Below are positions 9,356 through 62,964 of a stretch of 64,000 bases of DNA, one piece after another (within the stretch, counting starts at the first letter, position 1; each line of letters begins with the position of its first letter). The stretch is taken from positions 1 through 64,000 of IMG/VR virus record IMGVR_UViG_3300028676_000005, one strand, 5' to 3'. The notes beneath the pieces are model-generated. The model was not told where the DNA came from. It saw nothing but the letters and a program-made list of their open reading frames with translations, and searched no databases. A program made the translations under genes and the position numbers.

Positions 9356-10372
9356 TTACAGGATCAAACCATTGGCGTTGGCATTGCTTGCTTCAACGGT
9401 GCGGCTGACGAAGGTACTGCTGGTCTGCGCTTTGCGTTTTTCCAGTTCCGCCAGTTGTTCGGTCAGCGTGGCTACGGACTCGCCGTGGTCCAGCAACATG
9501 TGCATTTGGTTTACGCCTTCTGGCAGGACAGTATTCGGAGAGAAGACACCAATCGAACGAACCACAGCGCCTTCAAAAGCAACAGTGATGTTTTCACGCT
9601 TGTCGTACAGGCTCAGGTGGGCAACAGGAGTCTTGCCTTTGAACTTGGCCGGCTCGTCATAGAACGAGATGTGCGACAGGGTTGGTGCAACCTTGTAGTT
9701 CTTGGAGTAGTCCAGAATTTCCAGCAGGTCGCTGATGTCTTGTTCTTCGTTTTCACGAGTGGCGTACAGCGAGAGGAGCGAGATCTTGTTGATCAGTGCG
9801 CGGTCAATCTGGCCGCGGGTCTTGCCTGCTTCGTTACGGAATTCCATATAAGGAATTGCGGCGTTCAGTAGGTTAGGCCCGGTTTGCAGCAGCAGGGAGT
9901 GAACGGTCTTCAGGGAGTTTTCCATTTCTACCTGGGTGGTGTGGTCAGTGATGATTGCTACGACCACGCCTTTGTAGCCTTGTTGCTTCAACCAACGCAC
10001 GGTCAACAGAGCCAGCATGGAACCAGAACCACCGGCACCGGAGCACAGAACCACAACTACGCCTTTAGGACGGTTTTGAGTCAGGGTCTGGTCAACGAAA
10101 GGAATTGCTTCCTCGTAGTTGGCGCCCATTACTTTGCCGGAGCCTTGTGCTTCTTTTTCATTTGGGGTGCCGCCCTTAGGAGCAGGTACGCGGAACAGAG
10201 GAATGTTCAGTTCTGGCTTCAGGCGATTGTTGCCGCTGGCGTCGATAGCGATGTAACTGGCATTGGTGACACTGGCGCTCAGACCGCTGGTCTTCAACAG
10301 CATTGCCATGTTGATACCGGCGCCGCCACATGCGATGAAGCTCAATTCGGAATTAACAACTTGATTAGACAT
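9356..10372 (-). CDS. phuZ: Phage tubulin PhuZ
   Basis: 338 aa. Tubulin/FtsZ GTPase motifs ACGGAGINM, GSGK and CSGAGGSGS. Size and location match phiKZ gp39. Confidence 0.92.
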   Translation of the reverse strand: MSNQVVNSELSFIACGGAGINMAMLLKTSGLSASVTNASYIAIDASGNNRLKPELNIPLFRVPAPKGGTPNEKEAQGSGKVMGANYEEAIPFVDQTLTQNRPKGVVVVLCSGAGGSGSMLALLTVRWLKQQGYKGVVVAIITDHTTQVEMENSLKTVHSLLLQTGPNLLNAAIPYMEFRNEAGKTRGQIDRALINKISLLSLYATRENEEQDISDLLEILDYSKNYKVAPTLSHISFYDEPAKFKGKTPVAHLSLYDKRENITVAFEGAVVRSIGVFSPNTVLPEGVNQMHMLLDHGESVATLTEQLAELEKRKAQTSSTFVSRTVEASNANANGLIL

Positions 10373-10439
10373 GTGCCACTCTCTTCTACTGGGTTAAAAA
10401 AATCTTTAGAGAACTATTCTCTACTGTTATTACAAAGTA

Positions 10440-10448
10440 GTAATATAG
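10440..10448 (-). promoter_or_regulatory. Early promoter motif CTATATTAC upstream of phuZ
   Basis: Exact 9-mer repeated at four intergenic sites, all on the minus strand ahead of genes; contains the phiKZ early TATTAC core. Confidence 0.7.
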
Positions 10449-10496
10449 AGCCAAAAAGTTTTTGACTCCTATAATTAGTTGATACAGTTAAAATGC

Positions 10497-10543
10497 AAAA
10501 AAAAGCCTCGTTCTCAGAACCCGATTAAAGGTCTGAGACGAGG
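10497..10543 (-). terminator. Rho-independent terminator closing the RNA island
   Basis: CCTCGTCTCAGA...TCTGAGAACGAGG hairpin followed by T8 on the minus strand. Confidence 0.75.
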
Positions 10544-10544
10544 G

Positions 10545-10860
10545 TGGAGTATCAAACGGTTACAAACTCTTGTACTTAAACAAGAGGCAGGAATATAAAC
10601 ACCAGGCCTTTCGTTATGTGCCAGTATATTCGCGGTTCGCAATACCGGTGGTTCACAAAAGGTCTGGCGGGAAGTTTTCATTGGTCTTTTTACATCGACC
10701 AGCAACCAACAAGCCTTGGGAGGTACCCGTTGGTTGGCTACAAAGGACTTCCTAACCTCTACAGCAAGCGACAAACACCAGGCGAAAAGAGACGTCCAAC
10801 TGACATCTCCGCAAACAGTGAAGGATGGCACTGTTTACTTACACGGCCGCTAGACCATGT
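10545..10860 (-). ncRNA. Putative structured non-coding RNA domain (hairpin series)
   Basis: Consecutive hairpins on the minus strand: GTAAACAGTG/CACTGTTTGC, GAGATGTC/GACGTCTC, GTAGCCAAC/GTTGGTTGC, CTCTTGT/ACAAGAG. No credible ORF. Confidence 0.45.
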
Positions 10861-10956
10861 TGGGTGGAAGACTGGATGGATTCGAACCACCGACCAGCGA
10901 GGAGGGTAAATGATACCCGAGGACTCCCCGTTCTAACCAACTGAACTACAGTCTTC
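10861..10956 (-). ncRNA. tRNA-like RNA A with extended anticodon arm (22-nt 'loop' folding into GGGTA/TACCC with a TCATT tip)
   Basis: Acceptor AAGACTG/CAGTCTT plus G-1:C73. D arm GTTC-AGTTGGTTA-GAAC. T arm GGTGG-TTCGAAT-CCATC. 15 extra nt in the anticodon arm. 3' end CCACCCA. Confidence 0.75.
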
Positions 10957-10961
10957 ACATT

Positions 10962-11050
10962 TGGGGGAAAGGGCAGGACTTGAACCTACGACCTCCGAAC
11001 AAAGGCATGACCATTCGCACGGTGCTCTAACCAACTGAGCTACAGTTCCC
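10962..11050 (-). ncRNA. tRNA-like RNA B with extended anticodon arm (18-nt 'loop', TCATG tip)
   Basis: Acceptor GGAACTG/CCTTTCC (2 mismatches) plus G-1:C73 and encoded CCA. D arm GCTC-AGTTGGTTA-GAGC. T arm GTAGG-TTCAAGT-CCTGC. 11 extra nt in the anticodon arm. Confidence 0.75.
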
Positions 11051-11206
11051 ATAAATCTTGACTCGTTTACATGTGATTGGTTGTCACACGCATACTTTCT
11101 GAGGGCACGAGGCACCACCCATTTGGCGAACACACCAGTAACCCACCACAGGCCCCAACATGTCGTTTATCAGAAAGTTTCATCACCCATTGCTAGGTAA
11201 AGAAAA

Positions 11207-11282
11207 TGGCTCCGCGACCTGGACTCGAACCAGGGACCAACAGATTAACAGTCTGCTGCTCTACCAACTGAGCTATCGCGGA
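11207..11282 (-). tRNA. trnN: tRNA-Asn (GTT)
   Basis: Canonical 76-nt cloverleaf, loop CT-GTT-AA, perfect acceptor stem, G73-CCA. Confidence 0.97.
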
Positions 11283-11414
11283 ATGTAGCAGAAATCATTA
11301 GACATGTCTTAGGACTTTTACCCCACGTTTTTATCAAGGGCCGACTGCCTAGGCGCCCTGCGTGTTTTCTTTCTTTACCAGATTACCTTGATCACGGGGT
11401 CTGATAAAACAATG

Positions 11415-11490
11415 TGGCGGCGTAGCCAGGAGTCGAACCTGGAACCTTCGGTTTTGGAGACCGATGCTCTGCCAGTTGAGCTACTAGGCC
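11415..11490 (-). tRNA. trnW: tRNA-Trp (CCA)
   Basis: 76-nt cloverleaf, loop CT-CCA-AA, G73-CCA, C4.C69 mismatch. Confidence 0.95.
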
Positions 11491-11502
11491 TAATCTAAAT
11501 CT

Positions 11503-11586
11503 TGGGCGTCATTGGGTTCTTACCACGGGCCTTCAGCGGTGACCGACGACCAGGTCACACCCACGTTCTTCAGCCGAAGCAACGAC
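11503..11586 (-). ncRNA. ~80-nt stem-loop RNA with an acceptor-like terminus
   Basis: Closing stem GTCGTTG/CAATGAC followed by G-CCCA. Inner stems CTTCGGC/GCTGAAG and GTGACC/GGTCAC. G.U pairs form only on the minus strand. Confidence 0.5.
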
Positions 11587-11595
11587 TAAATCTTG

Positions 11596-11895
11596 AAATT
11601 GAATCCGTTAGCTATTATCAGGGTAGGAGACTGCCCGGTTACCAAGCCTGATAATAACTGAGTCACCTAGTCACGGAAAACAACGTAGGTAACTGCCAGG
11701 ACACCCCTGGCTGGTGTAACAGAGTTAATCCCCCGACTCCCATCTGTTACTTAACACGAACCACCAGCGTCATGGGTCAGTGTTAACATTTGAATTCAGG
11801 TAGGTCTACAGACTTTTACTGTACGTCATGAGTAACAGACCGGCCTCCAGATCTGTAACGGTTTTCTTCAGGGCGCAGGGCAGCGGCTAGAATAA
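11596..11895 (-). ncRNA. Putative structured ncRNA domain (large-loop hairpin series)
   Basis: Hairpins at 11611-11658, 11716-11750, ~11751-11796 and 11832-11859. No ORF. Confidence 0.5.
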
Positions 11896-12016
11896 GGTAG
11901 AGAGTGTGGGATTCGAACCCACGGGAGCAAGCTCACAGCCGGTTTCAAAGCCACCGCGCGGAAGACCGTACCGCAACTAATCCACCAGCCTCCTTCAACC
12001 ACTCGGACAACTCTCC
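11896..12016 (-). tRNA. tRNA-Ser(TGA)-like gene with a 35-nt insertion at position 31/32 or 32/33; no encoded CCA
   Basis: Acceptor GGAGAGT/ACTCTCT, Ser-type D arm TCCGAGTGGTTGAAGGA, anticodon stem GCTGG/CCGGC, long variable arm and T arm GTGGG-TTCGAAT-CCCAC. The 42-nt loop ends TTTGAAA. Confidence 0.7.
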
Positions 12017-12370
12017 AGAAACAAGATCCGTTCGCCATGACTGCAAGAAGGCGGATAACCGTCTACCAGCAATATGTTCTTACTTTCCCGTAGCCACGGA
12101 TAACAGCGGACCGAATACCCTGGAACAACATGAATGGGTACTGGATCAGCACGGGAAAGACCTCATGCGAGGTGGGTCGTCAAGGCTACTCTAGGAGTGC
12201 GTCGACTATCGAGCCAGCGACCAGGCCGGCTAATGAACGGGTCATCCCCGTTTATCCAGTTACAGGTGCCGTGAATGGGGACCTGTAACCAAATTTGTAT
12301 TAGAGTAGGGACATTATCCTTAGTCTCTTCGAAGGGCCCTCCGCAGATTGCACCCAAGACTGTATACTAA
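12017..12370 (-). ncRNA. Putative structured ncRNA domain
   Basis: Stems GTTACAGGT/ACCTGTAAC, AACGGG/CCCGTT, AGCCGGC/GCTGGCT, ACCTC/GAGGT and long-range CTTTCCCGT/ACGGGAAAG. Confidence 0.5.
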
Positions 12371-12378
12371 CCACCCAA

Positions 12379-12432
12379 TGTGTCGTGAGGGACTCGAACC
12401 CTACATGCCGCTATGGCGACAGAACCCAACCT
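12379..12432 (-). pseudogene. 3' half of a class II (Leu-like) tRNA
   Basis: Variable arm TGTCGC-CATA-GCGGCA, T arm AGGG-TTCGAGT-CCCT and acceptor 3' strand ACGACAC. No matching D arm or 5' acceptor strand upstream. Confidence 0.55.
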
Positions 12433-12484
12433 ACGCATTGATGATCTGACTTACCTGCCCGAGGAGACTAAGGTAAATCAAATA

Positions 12485-12561
12485 TGGCGCAACCAAGGGG
12501 ACTCGAACCCCTGACCACCCGCGTGACAGGCGGGTATTCTAACCAACTGAACTATGGGTGC
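12485..12561 (-). tRNA. trnD: tRNA-Asp (GTC)
   Basis: 77-nt cloverleaf, loop CT-GTC-AC, G73-CCA, C4.T69 mismatch. Confidence 0.96.
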
Positions 12562-12574
12562 TTTGTATAACATA
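12561..12574 (-). promoter_or_regulatory. Late-type promoter/leader TATGTTATACAAAG (copy 1, ending at G1 of tRNA-Asp)
   Basis: Exact 14-bp repeat of 13119-13132. Begins with TATG, the phiKZ nvRNAP late promoter core. Confidence 0.6.
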
Positions 12575-13119
12575 GTAAATCGGGACGAAGTCGATATGAG
12601 TTCTACTCTCATACTCTCTACAAGTGATCGAAGTCACTAGCAGTCTGGATCGCCCTTCATCATCGGCTTTTCATCCTTAAGCGCAGTAAACCCTGACGAC
12701 CGTTAGGCTAGAGGGAACCCACATTGCCCAGGTTTATCCAGATACCATGGAACCCATGGATTCTTTTTCAACACCGTCATATAACAGTGTCGAGTAATAA
12801 GTTAAGGAGAGGTCGCAGACGTGAACCACGGTCCTCTCCTGACCTTGAGACTATGATAAGGGCGGCGCCGCCGATATCACGTAACAAGCCGCCTCACTTT
12901 GTCAGTAGCCAGCCCGCGTGCTTTGCCGCAGAAGCGGCTCCCGCGAAACTGGTCTGTAGTAGACTTAGTGTGACTAAGAGTCTTGACGGGACTCCCATAG
13001 GGTTTTGATAAGAGCGCCTGTCACAGCTAACCCCGACCATCATAATTCATCCGGCACCACCCTTAAGGCTCCGAACAGTTTCCCCAAAGGGAAATTCCGC
13101 GAGATCATTTACTGGTCTC
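12575..13119 (-). ncRNA. Putative ~545-nt structured non-coding RNA
   Basis: No credible ORF. At least eight hairpins. Starts after the same 14-nt promoter/leader as tRNA-Asp. Confidence 0.55.
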
Positions 13120-13132
13120 TTTGTATAACATA
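13119..13132 (-). promoter_or_regulatory. Late-type promoter/leader TATGTTATACAAAG (copy 2)
   Basis: Exact repeat of 12561-12574 at the 5' edge of the RNA island. Confidence 0.6.
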
Positions 13133-13139
13133 ACAACTC

Positions 13140-14900
13140 TCAGTTTTCTTCTACCAGCGCAAACACAAATTCACCTTCTGATTGATGCACATTCCAGACA
13201 GTTTGCGTTTTAGGTGGGTAGACGTCAGTCTTGCCGAGTGGAGTAACCATTGCGGGAAACTCCATCATGTGCTGCGCGGTAGATATCTTGACCGTGTCAG
13301 TATAAGAACCAGCACCACAAGTAGTCGTAACTCGCACATCGGCTCTGAGAAGCCCTTTAACGTGATCTATTACAAATGCTTTGAACTTATCAAGCCCTTC
13401 TTCAGTAAGGTTGTTTGCAATACCTACAGGGATGTTATCAAGCTTGTCAAGCAAAACTTGTTTCATTTGATCGGTATTGGGGGTTGCTGTTAATACTGCT
13501 TTCGAATCTGCATCAACTTCATCAAAAACAATTTTACCACCGTCGAGAGCATAGACCTTAAAATAGGTCTTGCTTGCTGCTGGCTTAAGTTCTCCGCCAA
13601 GGATGGCCACGTGTGTAGGTGGCAATTCAACAACGCGGTGTGCTGTGTCGAGAGTAACCTGAACGAGATACCCGTTAACATCCGGGGTTACTTTAACAAG
13701 TATGTTTCCCTCAAATGGTTTATAGATCGTGTCGCCAATAGCATTTGTAAGTATTACAAGAGAACTCTTACTCAGCGTGGCGGTTATTTCACTAGGGATA
13801 TCAATTTTGTAATGAGGTTTTTCAATTTCCTCAACACCAGCCAATTGAACTCCGGTGCTTACTGACAACGAGGGTCCTTTCAAAGCATCAACAATGCCTG
13901 AAACAGACGTTTGCGCCGCACTAAGGGTTTCCATAAATTGAGGATGTGCCTCGTAAAAACGTTTACGAGCTAAGGCTGTTTGGTAATAGTCACTCTGTGC
14001 CGTATTATCCAGAGAAAGTTTAGTGAGGATCACAGCGCCCTTATCGCGGTAAACTCCGAAAACACTGTAATCACCCATACCAATATAGGCTTTAAGATCG
14101 GCAGGCAAAAAGTCTTTTGGTGTCATTGTTTTGCCAGGGTAATATGCCGTGCAGCTATATTTGTCATTATCAGCCGCCACTACCAAAACACTGGACAACA
14201 AATTACTAACAATCTCTGGGGTATGGACAATAACAAATGTAACATCTGGGTCATCTGTTAACTGTTTTTCACAAGCTTCTAAAGACTCGGGCGATAATAC
14301 TTCTTCTATTGCGCCGAGGGCTTCCTTGGAATTAAGAAACCAAGGTTTGCCTACTTCAGTTACCGTAATGGTCTTTGACTCAGGATTGTACTTTTCTGCG
14401 TTCTCTTTAAGCAGTGTAAGAAAGACATAAGAAACCAGCTTGGTCTTACGCAATTGTTCAATAATCTCGTCACTGGCATAAACACCATACTCACGCACTA
14501 GCGATGGAGCGATGCAGTAGAACGGGTAGAAGTCCAGTCCGATAAAAGCACCAAACTCAGCACCACGATGCTGCTCTTCCATTTTTTCTGGTTTGAAAAT
14601 GGGAGTACCTGCGATTACGTCTACCGTTTTCTCGGCATAGGTAATCGGTTTGATTGGCTCGGGTGTCCCAACCTTGGTCAGGGCCTTATAATCGATCTTC
14701 GAGATGGTATCACCCTTCTCGTTCATGATCCACGCATCATTGGCGATGATGTGTTTAGAGGGTGGGTTGCTAACCGTAAGTACGGGAACGCCACCCAAGT
14801 CTGGATCAGAGGCAATCACTTGGATGTTGACGGGATCTACCGCAGTGAGGAGCCGGAAGCTTACACCGTCTTTCAAGAGCATCTTTACATGTACAGTCAT
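13140..14900 (-). CDS. Hypothetical protein; N-terminal domain belongs to the local paralog family
   Basis: 586-aa ORF with AGGA RBS. Confidence 0.8.
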   Translation of the reverse strand: MTVHVKMLLKDGVSFRLLTAVDPVNIQVIASDPDLGGVPVLTVSNPPSKHIIANDAWIMNEKGDTISKIDYKALTKVGTPEPIKPITYAEKTVDVIAGTPIFKPEKMEEQHRGAEFGAFIGLDFYPFYCIAPSLVREYGVYASDEIIEQLRKTKLVSYVFLTLLKENAEKYNPESKTITVTEVGKPWFLNSKEALGAIEEVLSPESLEACEKQLTDDPDVTFVIVHTPEIVSNLLSSVLVVAADNDKYSCTAYYPGKTMTPKDFLPADLKAYIGMGDYSVFGVYRDKGAVILTKLSLDNTAQSDYYQTALARKRFYEAHPQFMETLSAAQTSVSGIVDALKGPSLSVSTGVQLAGVEEIEKPHYKIDIPSEITATLSKSSLVILTNAIGDTIYKPFEGNILVKVTPDVNGYLVQVTLDTAHRVVELPPTHVAILGGELKPAASKTYFKVYALDGGKIVFDEVDADSKAVLTATPNTDQMKQVLLDKLDNIPVGIANNLTEEGLDKFKAFVIDHVKGLLRADVRVTTTCGAGSYTDTVKISTAQHMMEFPAMVTPLGKTDVYPPKTQTVWNVHQSEGEFVFALVEEN

Positions 14901-61842: not shown

Positions 61843-62964
61843 CTATCGGGGAAACTTAGGAGCACTTTTGAACTGACTACGCAACTCAATGAGGGCGGAG
61901 CTTTCAGTAAAACGACCAGCAGTACACAGCAGTGGAATGATTGGTTCATAGCCACTAAGAAGTTTAATCATGTCTTTACTGACACGAGTCATGATCGCCA
62001 GGTTAGCAGCCTCACCAAACTCTGTGTACTTCATCCACCAGTTAGGTCCAATGATACGCTCGAACACTTCCAACATGTCAGCTAACAGTGCTGGATAGTC
62101 TTCAGGGAACACATCATCGTTAAACCGAAAGTTGCTAAACAAGATCTCAATGAAGTTTGGATACTTGGAGCGAATCATTTTGCGATTCTTTTCAATACCA
62201 AGATCGTCTTCATCAAGAATGGCAAGAACTTCTTTAATACTTTTAATGTCACCATTGGTGATCATGTACTTAAGAGCTTCTAACGCGGCATCTCTTCGTA
62301 CATCGCCAAAGCCAGCGGGATAGCTGTTCCAGATACCACGGTAACCGTTACGCATCCCATACTGCGCCGCGTTGTTAAACAGTGTGTTATACAAAGCACT
62401 TGTAACGCTGCGGTCTACAAACTGGTCAACACCGGTGAGCTTGGTAAGCATCTTTAACGTGTTACCGCCAATGATACTGCGCCAGTTCTTGTTAGCGGCA
62501 AACTTCTTACCGTCTGTAGTAACCAGCCCCCCAAGGTTAACCCCAGTAATGCGGGTAAACTCTGAGTTAATCTCGTTAGCAACTTTTCGCATTGCATTAG
62601 ATTCACTGCTAACAGGAAACCCAAGCTGTCGACTAGCCGCTGCTAAGATACCGTCGGTGTCAAACGTAACACCGTCACGACCAACTTTAATACTTTTGGT
62701 AATGTCCTTGGTATTAAGCAACCCATGGGAGATTGCGCCAATAACACCATCCAGCACACTTACTACGTCATCACGGTATTCGGTAATGGTACCCTGCACA
62801 CCAGTATCACGACTGGTTTTAGTGGCAATACCATTCTTCATCCGATCCGATGTGACGTTCATTGGATCTAAGTTGTCTTGCTTAACCCGAAGCATCGAGT
62901 TATTGGTCTTAGTCTTAAACGTGTTAAGACTAGGCGCAAGGTTGACTCCCTGAAACGGGTCCAT
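61843..62964 (-). CDS. Conserved hypothetical protein, probably virion
   Basis: 373-aa ORF with GGGG RBS. Confidence 0.7.
   Translation of the reverse strand: MDPFQGVNLAPSLNTFKTKTNNSMLRVKQDNLDPMNVTSDRMKNGIATKTSRDTGVQGTITEYRDDVVSVLDGVIGAISHGLLNTKDITKSIKVGRDGVTFDTDGILAAASRQLGFPVSSESNAMRKVANEINSEFTRITGVNLGGLVTTDGKKFAANKNWRSIIGGNTLKMLTKLTGVDQFVDRSVTSALYNTLFNNAAQYGMRNGYRGIWNSYPAGFGDVRRDAALEALKYMITNGDIKSIKEVLAILDEDDLGIEKNRKMIRSKYPNFIEILFSNFRFNDDVFPEDYPALLADMLEVFERIIGPNWWMKYTEFGEAANLAIMTRVSKDMIKLLSGYEPIIPLLCTAGRFTESSALIELRSQFKSAPKFPR

What the first reader, a model, noticed from the sequence alone, without database searches (positions are those of the whole stretch)
12575..13119. ~545-nt ORF-less structured RNA sharing an exact 14-nt promoter/leader with tRNA-Asp
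Seen in sequence: TATGTTATACAAAG occurs exactly at 13119-13132 and at 12561-12574. In the second copy the final G is G1 of tRNA-Asp; in the first it begins a hairpin (GAGACCAGTAAATGATCTC). Between the two copies lie at least eight hairpins (13079-13094, 12962-12982, 12926-12939, 12805-12840, 12771-12790, 12623-12638, 12594-12614 and others) and a possible long-range CCTTAAG/CTTAAGG pair. I found no tmRNA tag or ends, no RNase P GAGGAAAGUCC and no clear group I P7. Inference: a separately promoted, late-expressed large ncRNA of unknown family.
Basis: partly seen in the sequence, partly recalled or inferred. Interest (0 to 1): 0.75.

Follow-up and report, generated by a model that had tools for sequence, protein, structure and literature searches.

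The report
Two conserved jumbo-phage noncoding RNAs
The flagged 545 bases hold two separate, conserved, structured RNAs of a nucleus-forming jumbo phage. One of them, about 330 nt long, belongs to a new RNA gene family that also sits unannotated in the laboratory phage EL, so its unknown function can now be tested.

Summary
TATGTTATACAAAG occurs exactly at 13119-13132 and 12561-12574 on the minus strand. The second copy ends on G1 of tRNA-Asp. The interval has no conserved ORF and matches no Rfam family.

It is not one RNA family but two.

Module A (13119 to about 12793, roughly 327 nt) is 86-96% identical in seven relatives whose neighbouring protein is only 48-78% identical. It recurs at 53-56% identity in more distant uncultured nucleus-forming jumbo phages (chimalliviruses). 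It also lies in an unannotated 323-nt gap of Pseudomonas phage EL. Covariation is strong: in the 5' domain 98.9% of cells pair, and 11 of 18 pairs carry compensatory changes (0 of 500 shuffles reach this). In two metatranscriptomes, apart from generic tRNA matches, the contigs laid on this stretch lie only inside A.

Module X (about 12759-12575) is a second covarying family. It usually sits just 5' of a tRNA, and its own 3' tail carries the second copy of the motif in four lineages.

The repeat is therefore a conserved box, probably a promoter plus leader, and not a chance match or an insertion scar.

The function of A is unknown. I read it as a stand-alone, trans-acting stable RNA. The closest analogues are ROOL and GOLLD, but it is not a member of either.

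The parts
13119..13132 (-). Box copy 1 (TATGTTATACAAAG), directly 5' of module A. Probably a promoter plus initial transcribed sequence.
   Evidence: Exact match. Invariant in all 8 close genomes. TATGTTATACA in L016 and L043, TTATATACAAC in L014, L015, the L020 group and L021, and TATTATATAC in phage EL.
12793..13119 (-). Module A: a conserved, structured, stand-alone ncRNA of about 327 nt (a new family).
   Evidence: 86-96% nt identity in 7 relatives whose flanking protein is 48-78% identical. nhmmer hits in distant phages with E from 7.5e-21 to 5.4e-13. 81 alifold pairs, 38 of them compensatory, against a maximum of 22 in controls. RNA-seq contigs at 12844-13080 and 12888-13069.
13101..13119 (-). 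P1 hairpin at the 5' end of A.
   Evidence: The stem sequence is replaced entirely but stays paired: GAGA../..UCUC, AGGUGU../..ACACCU, GGAAG../..CUUCC.
12970..13097 (-). 5' domain of A (P2, P3, P4, P5), modelled as covariance model R1.
   Evidence: 98.9% of cells paired and 11 of 18 pairs with changes on both sides; 0 of 500 shuffles and no slid control come near. G-U pairs make the structure specific to the minus strand.
13048..13077 (-). P3 hairpin whose loop carries the invariant palindrome CCUUAAGG (13068-13061) followed by GUGG.
   Evidence: The loop letters are invariant in the 14 sequences of A4; CUUAAGGGUG is kept in EL and L043. The stem covaries (helix 2).
13010..13034 (-). P4 hairpin with a variable, covarying stem and a conserved apical loop UGUGACAG (13025-13018).
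   Evidence: The stem changes GGUCGGGG/CUCUUAUC to GUAGUGG/CCUGCUGC to GUUGCGG/CCCGCAGC. The loop UGAC is invariant in the metagenomic homologues. GUGACAG is complementary to the tRNA-Asp anticodon loop.
12844..12897 (-). 3' domain of A, with GUGAGGCGGCUUGU (12897-12884) and a covarying 12+4-bp hairpin.
   Evidence: 7 of 12 and 3 of 4 pairs are compensatory. The identical 14-mer is present, colinear, in EL.
12793..12840 (-). Terminal hairpin of A (12840-12805) plus the tail UAACUUAUUACU (12804-12793). Terminator-like.
   Evidence: Inverted repeat I1. Followed by CCUUUUUUAUUU in L009, UUUUAUUUUCU in L007 and U8 in EL. Missing in L015 and L021, so optional. The simple terminator scan does not call it in the window.
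12771..12790 (-). Junction hairpin with loop UAUAUG and a 7-10-bp stem, between A and X.
   Evidence: A hairpin with a T(G/C/T)ATATG loop and a covarying stem follows A in most lineages. L016 has no TATG there. The hairpin-TATG combination is not enriched genome-wide: 60 found against about 70 in shuffles.
12575..12759 (-). Module X: a second conserved structured RNA family (nhmmer core 12751-12577), lying 5' of tRNA-Asp.
   Evidence: Homologues in L016, L043, L020/L030, L032-L034, L027 and L021/L025, with E from 1e-27 to 1e-52. 39 pairs, 93.5% canonical, 15 compensatory, against a maximum of 9 in controls.
12561..12574 (-). Box copy 2, the native 3' tail of module X. Its last G is G1 of tRNA-Asp.
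   Evidence: GUCCCGAUUU(A/C)C-UAUGUUAUAC ends X in the window, L016, L043 and the L020 group, where all 14 nt are exact. In L021, X meets tRNA-Leu without the box.
12485..12561 (-). tRNA-Asp(GUC) with encoded CCA.
   Evidence: ARAGORN and Rfam, 64.8 bits.

Best explanation
The interval holds two independent RNA genes of a 2.6-kb RNA-only island (13139 to about 10500, minus strand) in an uncultured PhuZ-encoding jumbo phage. Module A (13119 to about 12793) is a stand-alone structured RNA. It is transcribed from a dedicated box, (T/C)AT(G/T)(T/A)TATAC(AA), and ends at its own terminal hairpin. It accumulates as a stable RNA and acts in trans through invariant loops (CCUUAAGG-GUGG, UGACA, GUCAA, AGUCAC, UGAGGC). 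Module X (about 12759-12575) is a separate structured module that normally lies directly 5' of a tRNA. It is most simply read as a conserved pre-tRNA leader or spacer RNA that RNase P releases at the tRNA 5' end. The second 14-mer is X's own 3' tail: a second copy of the same box, which starts or marks the next RNA gene. Shown here: conservation, covariation, strand, module boundaries, module shuffling and the presence of A in RNA libraries. Inferred: the promoter role of the box, termination after A, processing of X, and any molecular function.
For: Genome and island. A is conserved far above its flanks, and conservation stops at 12793 in every close relative. A recurs in distant phages, and in EL it sits in a different gene context with a canonical terminator and no adjacent tRNA. 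Covariation of A. Metatranscriptome contigs lie only inside A, while flanks that are 94% identical in relatives are uncovered. X family and its covariation. X sits next to tRNA-Asp (window), tRNA-Leu (L021), tRNA-Tyr (L043) and a class-II tRNA-like gene (L020 group). The box lies at both positions in the window, L016 and L043, and at the X tail in the L020 group, where A's own box is the TTATATACAAC variant. In phiKZ the late promoter is TATG with G as +1, and downstream sequence matters (PMC4666361; PMC12809450).
Against: No 5' or 3' ends were mapped. The RNA evidence is low-depth assembled contigs (depth 2-6) without strand information, and DNA carry-over cannot be strictly excluded. In L016 and L043 no terminator-like element separates A from X, so A and X may be one primary transcript there. 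TATG is not conserved (TATT in EL, TATA in L014 and the L020 group), and the box differs from the genome's 14 early-type CTATATTAC promoters, so its promoter class is unknown. An AU-rich RNase processing site would fit the same data. In the window the tail after A's hairpin is U-poor, and the terminator scan does not call it.
Confidence: 0.7

Rival explanations
1. One reading: one functional RNA of about 545 nt (A+X), bounded by two copies of the same promoter/leader.
For: The layout box-A-X-box recurs in L016 and L043, and A and X are adjacent in L021. No obvious terminator separates A from X in L016 or L043.
Against: A occurs without X in seven close relatives and in EL. In the L020 group a tRNA-Leu lies between A and X. 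A has a terminator-like end. RNA contigs cover A only. The only proposed A-X pairing is not conserved.
Confidence: 0.15
2. The 14-mer is an RNA processing site, an AU-rich single-stranded linker cut by RNase E or a similar enzyme. On this reading the whole island is one long precursor read through from the upstream 586-aa gene.
For: No terminator lies between the 586-aa ORF (stop at 13140) and A. The box is AU-rich and sits between structured modules. tRNAs in the island must be processed in any case.
Against: In EL the box lies in an intergenic gap 45 nt after gp101 and the motif is kept as DNA sequence. About 20 nt upstream of copy 1, overlapping the last codons of a fast-evolving protein, are also invariant, which is promoter-like. 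The TATG core matches the known promoter of the nvRNAP, the phage's non-virion RNA polymerase.
Confidence: 0.25
3. The repeat is a scar: a target-site duplication or recombination junction left when a cassette (X plus tRNA-Asp) was inserted.
For: Compared with the seven closest relatives, 12792-12448 is an insertion bounded on its left flank by A, and the two 14-mers are direct repeats 558 nt apart.
Against: The same motif ends X in L016, L043 and the L020 group, independently of what precedes A. There are no terminal inverted repeats and no paralogue elsewhere in the genome. The direct repeats do not flank the inserted segment: copy 1 lies 5' of A, which is ancestral. Recombination at shared boxes may still be how cassettes move.
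Confidence: 0.07
4. The interval is decayed coding sequence or a neutral spacer with chance hairpins.
For: The single-sequence fold is only moderately better than shuffles (z = -3.0).
Against: Nucleotide conservation exceeds that of neighbouring genes. Changes are compensatory. Substitutions and indels ignore reading frames. The element persists in EL, where the flanking proteins have no detectable homologues in this genome.
Confidence: 0.02

Closest known systems
ROOL (RF03087) and GOLLD (RF01998) RNAs
   Same: They are phage-encoded, ORF-less and extensively base-paired. They are often next to tRNA islands, with tRNAs sometimes inside GOLLD's linker, and they are abundant RNAs of unknown function. 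Conserved palindromic loops act as intermolecular kissing bridges in them (bioRxiv 10.1101/2024.12.08.627333). Module A has an invariant palindromic loop, CUUAAG.
   Different: Neither model matches, even at E<=10. A is about 300-350 nt, against about 580 and over 800 nt. A occurs in nucleus-forming phages of Gram-negative hosts. Oligomerisation is untested.
Stable 'species 1 and 2' RNAs (rnaC, rnaD) of the phage T4 tRNA cluster (from my own knowledge; not checked with a tool)
   Same: They are small stable RNAs of unknown function, encoded among phage tRNA genes and matured with them. This resembles module X and the other inter-tRNA modules.
   Different: They are unrelated in sequence and shorter (about 120-140 nt). 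A has its own promoter-like box and terminator, and in EL it stands apart from tRNAs.
phiKZ late (nvRNAP) promoter, 5'-TATG-3' with G as +1
   Same: The box begins with TATG in the window, L016 and L043. In phiKZ the sequence downstream of TATG strongly affects promoter strength (PMC4666361, PMC12809450). This would explain why 10 further bases are kept.
   Different: TATG is replaced by TATT or TATA in EL, L014, L015, the L020 group and L021. The conserved core is TATAC(AA). No transcription start was mapped.
PeSL-type mobile regulatory cassettes (promoter plus stem-loop) of T4-like phages (from my own knowledge)
   Same: Short conserved promoter and hairpin elements lie at the junctions of modules that are shuffled between related phages. 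Here these are the box, the UAUAUG hairpin, and the CCA-UAUU(U)G tRNA trailers.
   Different: Here the shuffled units are RNA genes and tRNAs, not ORFs. A role in recombination is only inferred.
T-box specifier loop / anticodon kissing
   Same: The P4 apical loop of A shows Y-GAC-A. In the window, GUGACAG is a 7-nt perfect complement of the tRNA-Asp anticodon loop. The P3 loop carries an invariant GGUGG that could pair with an NCCA end.
   Different: There is no T-box architecture and no Rfam hit. A acts in trans, if it acts this way at all. The chance level is high. The EL loop (UGGCA) does not fit EL's only tRNA, Thr-CGU.

Membership tests
Any Rfam 15 family (tmRNA, RNase P, group I/II introns, 6S, SRP, ROOL, GOLLD, YrlA and others) | Covariance-model score at or above the family's gathering threshold. 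| tested here: not met
   Only tRNAs pass. In 12575-13119 the best other match is a chance lncRNA hit on the opposite strand at 18 bits, E=1.5. The same holds for four distant relatives.
Structured non-coding RNA (generic) | Base pairs maintained by compensatory substitutions on one strand, with no conserved reading frame. | tested here: met
   A. X. Frames are broken by indels and stops.
ROOL/GOLLD-like ornate phage RNAs (kind, not family) | A phage-borne large RNA beside a tRNA island. | tested here: met
   A is the first gene of a 2.6-kb tRNA/RNA island in the window clade. In EL it lies 3.6 kb from the only tRNA.
ROOL/GOLLD-like ornate phage RNAs (kind, not family) | RNA-only homo-oligomeric assembly. 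| not testable with these tools
   Complex prediction refuses RNA-only jobs. Only an invariant palindromic loop hints at it.
phiKZ-type late promoter | TATG with transcription starting at the G. | tested here: inconclusive
   The motif is present in the window, L016 and L043 but is TATT or TATA elsewhere. The start site cannot be mapped here.
Chimallivirus early promoter (CTATATTAC type in this genome) | Match to the motif found 14 times in the genome. | tested here: not met
   The box differs from CTATATTAC. The early motif precedes PhuZ at 10447.
Intrinsic terminator at the 3' end of A | A G+C-rich hairpin followed by a U tract. | tested here: inconclusive
   Met in EL (U8), L009 and L007. 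In the window the hairpin is present but the tail is U-poor and the scan does not call it. The hairpin is absent in L015 and L021.
MITE or insertion with target-site duplication | Terminal inverted repeats, and direct repeats flanking the inserted segment. | tested here: not met
   There are no terminal inverted repeats, and the repeats do not bracket the inserted segment.

The most novel reading that the evidence does not exclude
Module A is a trans-acting RNA machine kept from peat and lake phages to Pseudomonas phage EL. It could be a tRNA-binding RNA: its invariant P4 loop (Y-GAC-A) would kiss the anticodon loop of tRNA-Asp, and its GGUGG loop would hold the CCA end, giving a free-standing T-box-like sensor, shield or decoy for the GUN (queuosine-family) tRNAs that dominate the island. 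Alternatively it could be a self-assembling RNA that dimerises through the invariant CUUAAG loop, as ROOL and GOLLD do.
Probability: 0.12. Interest if true: 0.85.

Novelty: new variant of a known kind. Interest (0 to 1): 0.62.

Why it matters
Nucleus-forming jumbo phages are studied intensively, yet almost nothing is known about their non-coding RNAs. Here a 2.6-kb block with no conserved ORF in the parts I tested evolves more slowly than the protein genes around it. Only about 0.4 kb of it is recognisable tRNA. Its first gene, module A, survives across phages whose flanking proteins have lost all detectable similarity. It is detectable in environmental RNA libraries. It also exists, unannotated, in ten Elvirus genomes, including the cultured phage EL. 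That turns a metagenomic curiosity into something testable at the bench by Northern blot, antisense knock-down and pull-down. It also adds a Gram-negative, nucleus-forming counterpart to the ROOL/GOLLD puzzle of large phage RNAs beside tRNA islands.

Tried and rejected
- Rfam at gathering and at E<=10, on the window and on four relatives: only tRNAs.
- ARAGORN tmRNA search: none.
- blastn and tblastn against GenBank phages with the window's RNA block and the 586-aa protein: only tRNA hits, or nothing.
- The long-range CCTTAAG/CTTAAGG pair: not conserved.
- RNAalifold's closing helix GAGAC/GUCUC, and the pairing of the P4 loop with GCUUGUUAC: the distant homologues do not support either. The local P1 hairpin is supported instead.
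- Hairpin-TATG as a genome-wide promoter type: not enriched.
- k-mer enrichment upstream of genes recovers only the early CTATATTAC motif, not the box.
- Third copy at 62383: antisense inside an ORF, E about 0.2, treated as chance.
- Paralogues of X elsewhere in the genome: none.
- Pattern hits L022, L024 and L026 (gut metagenomes) are chance matches inside a bacterial gene.
- The phiKZ hit of model R1 (16 bits) lies inside CDS PHIKZ266 and is treated as false.
- R1 finds nothing in Erwinia RisingSun, Shewanella FishSpeaker or Klebsiella Miami.
- The core motif of A is absent from 185,579 prokaryote species genomes.
- The supplementary tables of the 10,006-candidate viral RNA catalogue (PMC10690425) are not held, so I could not check whether A or X is already listed there unnamed.

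Full report
OBSERVATION. The 14-mer TATGTTATACAAAG is exact at 13119-13132 and 12561-12574 on the minus strand. ARAGORN and Rfam place tRNA-Asp(GUC) at 12485-12561, so the last G of the second copy is tRNA position 1. The first copy abuts the hairpin 13119-13101. No Rfam family other than tRNA matches anywhere in 10500-13400, even at E<=10. The 578-nt stretch folds somewhat better than shuffles (z = -3.0). Only short ORFs occur. The 49-aa minus-strand ORF meets an early stop in relative L003, and 1-4-nt indels in relatives break all frames. What needs revision is the idea that the interval is one unit.

CONTEXT. The window is the first 64 kb of a complete 229,429-bp IMG/VR virus record from peat metagenomes. 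It encodes a PhuZ tubulin (9356-10372, phrog_4733, E = 4e-55). Its relatives carry chimallin (the phage-nucleus shell protein) and the divergent DNA polymerase in synteny. It is thus an uncultured nucleus-forming jumbo phage. The nearest GenBank PhuZ is at most 37% identical. On the minus strand, from the stop of a 586-aa ORF (13140) to an intrinsic terminator at about 10500, lies 2.6 kb without a conserved ORF in the parts I tested. It holds tRNA-Asp, tRNA-Trp, tRNA-Asn, two or three aberrant tRNA-like genes, and about 2 kb of other sequence.

COMPARATIVE ANATOMY. Homologues of the 586-aa protein (78-48% identity) and of PhuZ (93-40%) led to contigs with the same island. Pattern scans added more.

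In the seven close relatives the stretch 13196-12793 is 86-96% identical at the nucleotide level. This holds even where the adjacent protein is 48% identical. The similarity stops at 12793 in five relatives, at 12804 in L007 and at 12847 in L009. I call this stretch module A (13119 to about 12793).

None of the seven has the next 345 nt (12792-12448). That slot instead holds 29 nt (L003), other sequence (L007), a tRNA-Tyr (L009), or a different module C with or without tRNA-Tyr (L008, L010, L012, L013).

More distant phages (PhuZ 49-61% identical) have A at 53-56% identity. In these, the window's 3' part reappears as a family of its own, module X (window core 12751-12577). It is found in L016, L043, L020/L030, L032-L034, L027 and L021/L025. 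The layouts are:
- box-A-X-box-tRNA in the window (Asp) and L043 (Tyr);
- box-A-X-box-other module in L016;
- A-X-tRNA-Leu in L021;
- A-tRNA-Leu-X-box-tRNA-like gene in the L020 group.
A and X are thus often neighbours, but they are separable.

STRUCTURE. For A, RNAalifold on 11 sequences gives 81 pairs with 91.5% canonical cells. Of these, 38 pairs have changes on both sides, against 10-19 for slid partners and a mean of 13 (maximum 22) for permuted partners. On 15 sequences the universal core is 36 pairs, 95.7% canonical, with 18 compensatory against a maximum of 11.

I modelled the 5' domain (13097-12970) as covariance model R1. On the alignment of 16 sequences to that model, 98.9% of cells pair. 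Eleven of 18 pairs change on both sides, against 5.3 +/- 1.1 in shuffles (0 of 500 reach the observed value) and 1-5 in slid controls. That alignment is fitted to the model, which favours the structure somewhat. Frequent G-U pairs show that the folded strand is the minus strand, the same as the tRNAs.

Unpaired letters that never or hardly ever vary are the P3 loop CCUUAAGG-GUGG, then UAUGAU, the P4 loop UGAC(A), then ACCUAUG, GUCAA, AGUCAC and UGAGGC. This pattern is typical of RNAs with tertiary or intermolecular contacts.

For X, six sequences give 39 pairs, 93.5% canonical, with 15 compensatory against a maximum of 9 in controls. A closing helix CUGGAU/AUCCAG also covaries in L021 (UUGGUU/GACCGA).

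EXPRESSION. Two metatranscriptomes (freshwater X21 and lake X23) hold 58% and 52% of the sampled words of A but only 6-7% of the words of the whole 2.7-kb island. When laid on 10400-13500, their phage-specific contigs lie only inside A: 12844-13080 (237 nt, 5 differences) and 12888-13069 (182 nt, no differences). Nothing covers the upstream ORF, module X or the downstream modules, although those parts are about 94% identical in the nearest relative and would have been laid. Depth is low (2-6), contigs carry no strand, and DNA carry-over cannot be formally excluded. The result fits A being the most abundant and stable product of the locus.

THE 3' END OF A. A ends in a variable hairpin (12840-12805) followed by UAACUUAUUACU. 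The hairpin is followed by CCUUUUUUAUUU in L009, by UUUUAUUUUCU in L007 and by eight U in EL. It is missing in L015 and L021. It behaves like a terminator rather than a functional part of the fold. A second hairpin with loop U(G/C/U)AUAUG and a covarying stem follows in most lineages (12790-12771 in the window). I could not decide whether this is a promoter, a processing signal or the true 3' end of A. Hairpin-TATG is not a general motif of this genome.

THE REPEATED BOX. Copy 1 is invariant in the eight close genomes, together with about 20 nt upstream that overlap the last codons of a fast-evolving protein. It reads TATGTTATACA in L016 and L043, TTATATACAAC in L014, L015, the L020 group and L021, and TATTATATAC in EL. 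The common core is AT-N-N-TATAC(AA).

Copy 2 belongs to X. The tail GUCCCGAUUU(A/C)C-UAUGUUAUAC ends X in the window, L016, L043 and the L020 group. In the L020 group all 14 nt are identical to the window, although A there is preceded by the other variant.

The repeat is therefore neither chance nor a target-site duplication. It is a conserved element placed 0-17 nt before the first base of an RNA gene. It differs from the 14 early-type CTATATTAC promoters of this genome, one of which precedes PhuZ. In phiKZ, late promoters are TATG with G as +1, and downstream sequence controls their strength (PMC4666361; PMC12809450). That would account for a box made of TATG plus ten conserved downstream bases. 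It predicts a 10-nt leader, GUUAUACAAA, before both A and tRNA-Asp. Because TATG itself is not universal, I give the promoter reading about 0.6 and an AU-rich processing site about 0.25-0.3.

PHAGE EL. Model R1 finds one match in the complete genome of Pseudomonas phage EL (106656-106779, 29.7 bits, E about 1e-3 for the genome). It finds none in RisingSun, FishSpeaker or Miami, and only a weak match inside a CDS in phiKZ.

The EL match lies in an unannotated 323-nt gap between gp101 and gp102. Outside the modelled part, EL also has the upstream box, the 14-nt string GUGAGGCGGCUUGU at the colinear place (an independent nhmmer hit with E = 0.003), and a textbook terminator. The element is 95.5-100% conserved in ten Elvirus records and is annotated as RNA in none of them.

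EL gp098-gp102 have no detectable homologue in the window's genome. EL's only tRNA (Thr-CGU) lies 3.6 kb away. A is therefore an autonomous gene kept across a distance at which its neighbours are unrecognisable. It is not a cis-element of any flanking gene. No prokaryote genome among 185,579 species carries its core motif.

WHAT IT IS LIKE, AND WHAT IT IS NOT. A and X fail the membership test for every Rfam family. In kind they resemble ROOL and GOLLD: large, ORF-less phage RNAs beside tRNA islands, with tRNAs sometimes embedded and function unknown. X also resembles the stable non-tRNA species of the T4 tRNA cluster (my own knowledge). The box and hairpin junctions between shuffled modules recall the PeSL regulatory cassettes of T4-like phages (my own knowledge).

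MECHANISM. My best reading (0.7 for the anatomy, much less for function) has two parts. A is made from its own box, stops at its hairpin, accumulates, and acts in trans through its invariant loops. X is a structured leader or spacer that is co-transcribed with the following tRNA and released by RNase P.

Two leads for A's function are recorded but not established.
- The invariant palindrome CUUAAG in the P3 loop could mediate dimerisation, as in OLE, ROOL and GOLLD.
- The P4 loop GUGACAG is a perfect 7-nt complement of the tRNA-Asp anticodon loop, and Y-GAC-A is kept in 15 of the 16 metagenomic homologues compared (L043 reads UGACU). However, a 10-nt complement is expected about 0.25 times by chance in this stretch, and EL's loop (UGGCA) does not fit its own tRNA.

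VERDICT. The finding is real and more interesting than a single orphan RNA. It consists of two new structured RNA families, one of which reaches a laboratory phage. The 545-nt unit, the 'late' label and the long-range pair are not supported.

LIMITS. No transcript ends were mapped. RNA evidence is low-depth. Alignment depth is modest (15-16 sequences, about 8 lineages). I could not check whether the families appear, unnamed, in the 2023 catalogue of 10,006 viral RNA candidates.

Noticed in passing
window 12296-12484 (-): Module C is another conserved RNA, also present in L008, L010, L012, L013 and L021. It has a T-arm-like GUAGGGUUCGAGUCCCUCAC and a D-loop-like GGUUAGUAUAC placed after it. It may be a tRNA-like or permuted-tRNA-like element. 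Its length and layout parallel those of X.
   Followed up: partly
window 12016-12300 (-): Module B (about 280 nt) is conserved in all relatives that extend this far. Like X, it starts with a hairpin followed by CUGGAUAAAC and has a distant AUCCAG partner. It directly precedes a tRNA-like gene.
   Followed up: partly
window 11896-12016 (-): A class-II-type tRNA-like gene with a good acceptor, D arm and T arm but about 37 extra nt in the anticodon region. ARAGORN with introns allowed reads anticodon GAA. Rfam gives only a 22-bit tRNA-Sec hit. It is conserved in L003 and in the L020 group.
   Followed up: partly
window 10866-10955 and 10965-11049 (-): Two further aberrant tRNAs that only Rfam detects (44 and 40 bits). 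With a 12-nt 'intron' allowed, ARAGORN reads the first as anticodon UUA, an ochre-suppressor type. In L009 the homologue is called with a 4-nt anticodon.
   Followed up: partly
window about 11810-11880, 11500-11580 and 11310-11400 (-): Repeated structured leaders of the form GAAGAAAAC ... hairpin ... GUAAAAGUC(C/U) occur in the island. The two downstream copies lie just 5' of tRNA-Trp and tRNA-Asn, and CAAGAUUUA(U/G) lies just before several tRNAs.
   Followed up: no
window 10500-10870 (-): A further RNA of about 370 nt lies at the end of the island and is 81-97% identical in relatives. The 105-aa ORF in it is broken in L003, L009 and L010. Substitutions fall 29/33/33 by codon position. There are 115 alifold pairs, 16 of them compensatory. 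An intrinsic terminator follows at about 10545-10500.
   Followed up: partly
whole genome, e.g. window 10447 (-): There are fourteen copies of CTATATTAC with conserved flanks (..CAAACCTATATTACT..GTGAGTAA), 13 of them on the minus strand and one in front of PhuZ. This is the phiKZ/EL-type early promoter. EL's annotated 'putative phage promoters' read AAACCTA(G/A)ATTATT.
   Followed up: partly
NC_007623.1 (phage EL) 106612-106934; L041:3113-3435: This is an unannotated intergenic gap that holds the module A homologue with a strong terminator. The same element is unannotated in all ten Elvirus records.
   Followed up: yes
window 13140-14900 (-): The 586-aa ORF upstream of A has no PHROG hit and no GenBank phage match. 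It has only 8 clusters among 5.8 billion proteins, all in this phage clade.
   Followed up: no
window 62383-62399 (+): A third near-copy of the box (TGTGTTATACAAAGCAC, 15 of 15 nt matching box copy 2 plus the tRNA-Asp start) lies antisense inside a 373-aa ORF. It is probably chance (BLAST E = 0.22).
   Followed up: partly
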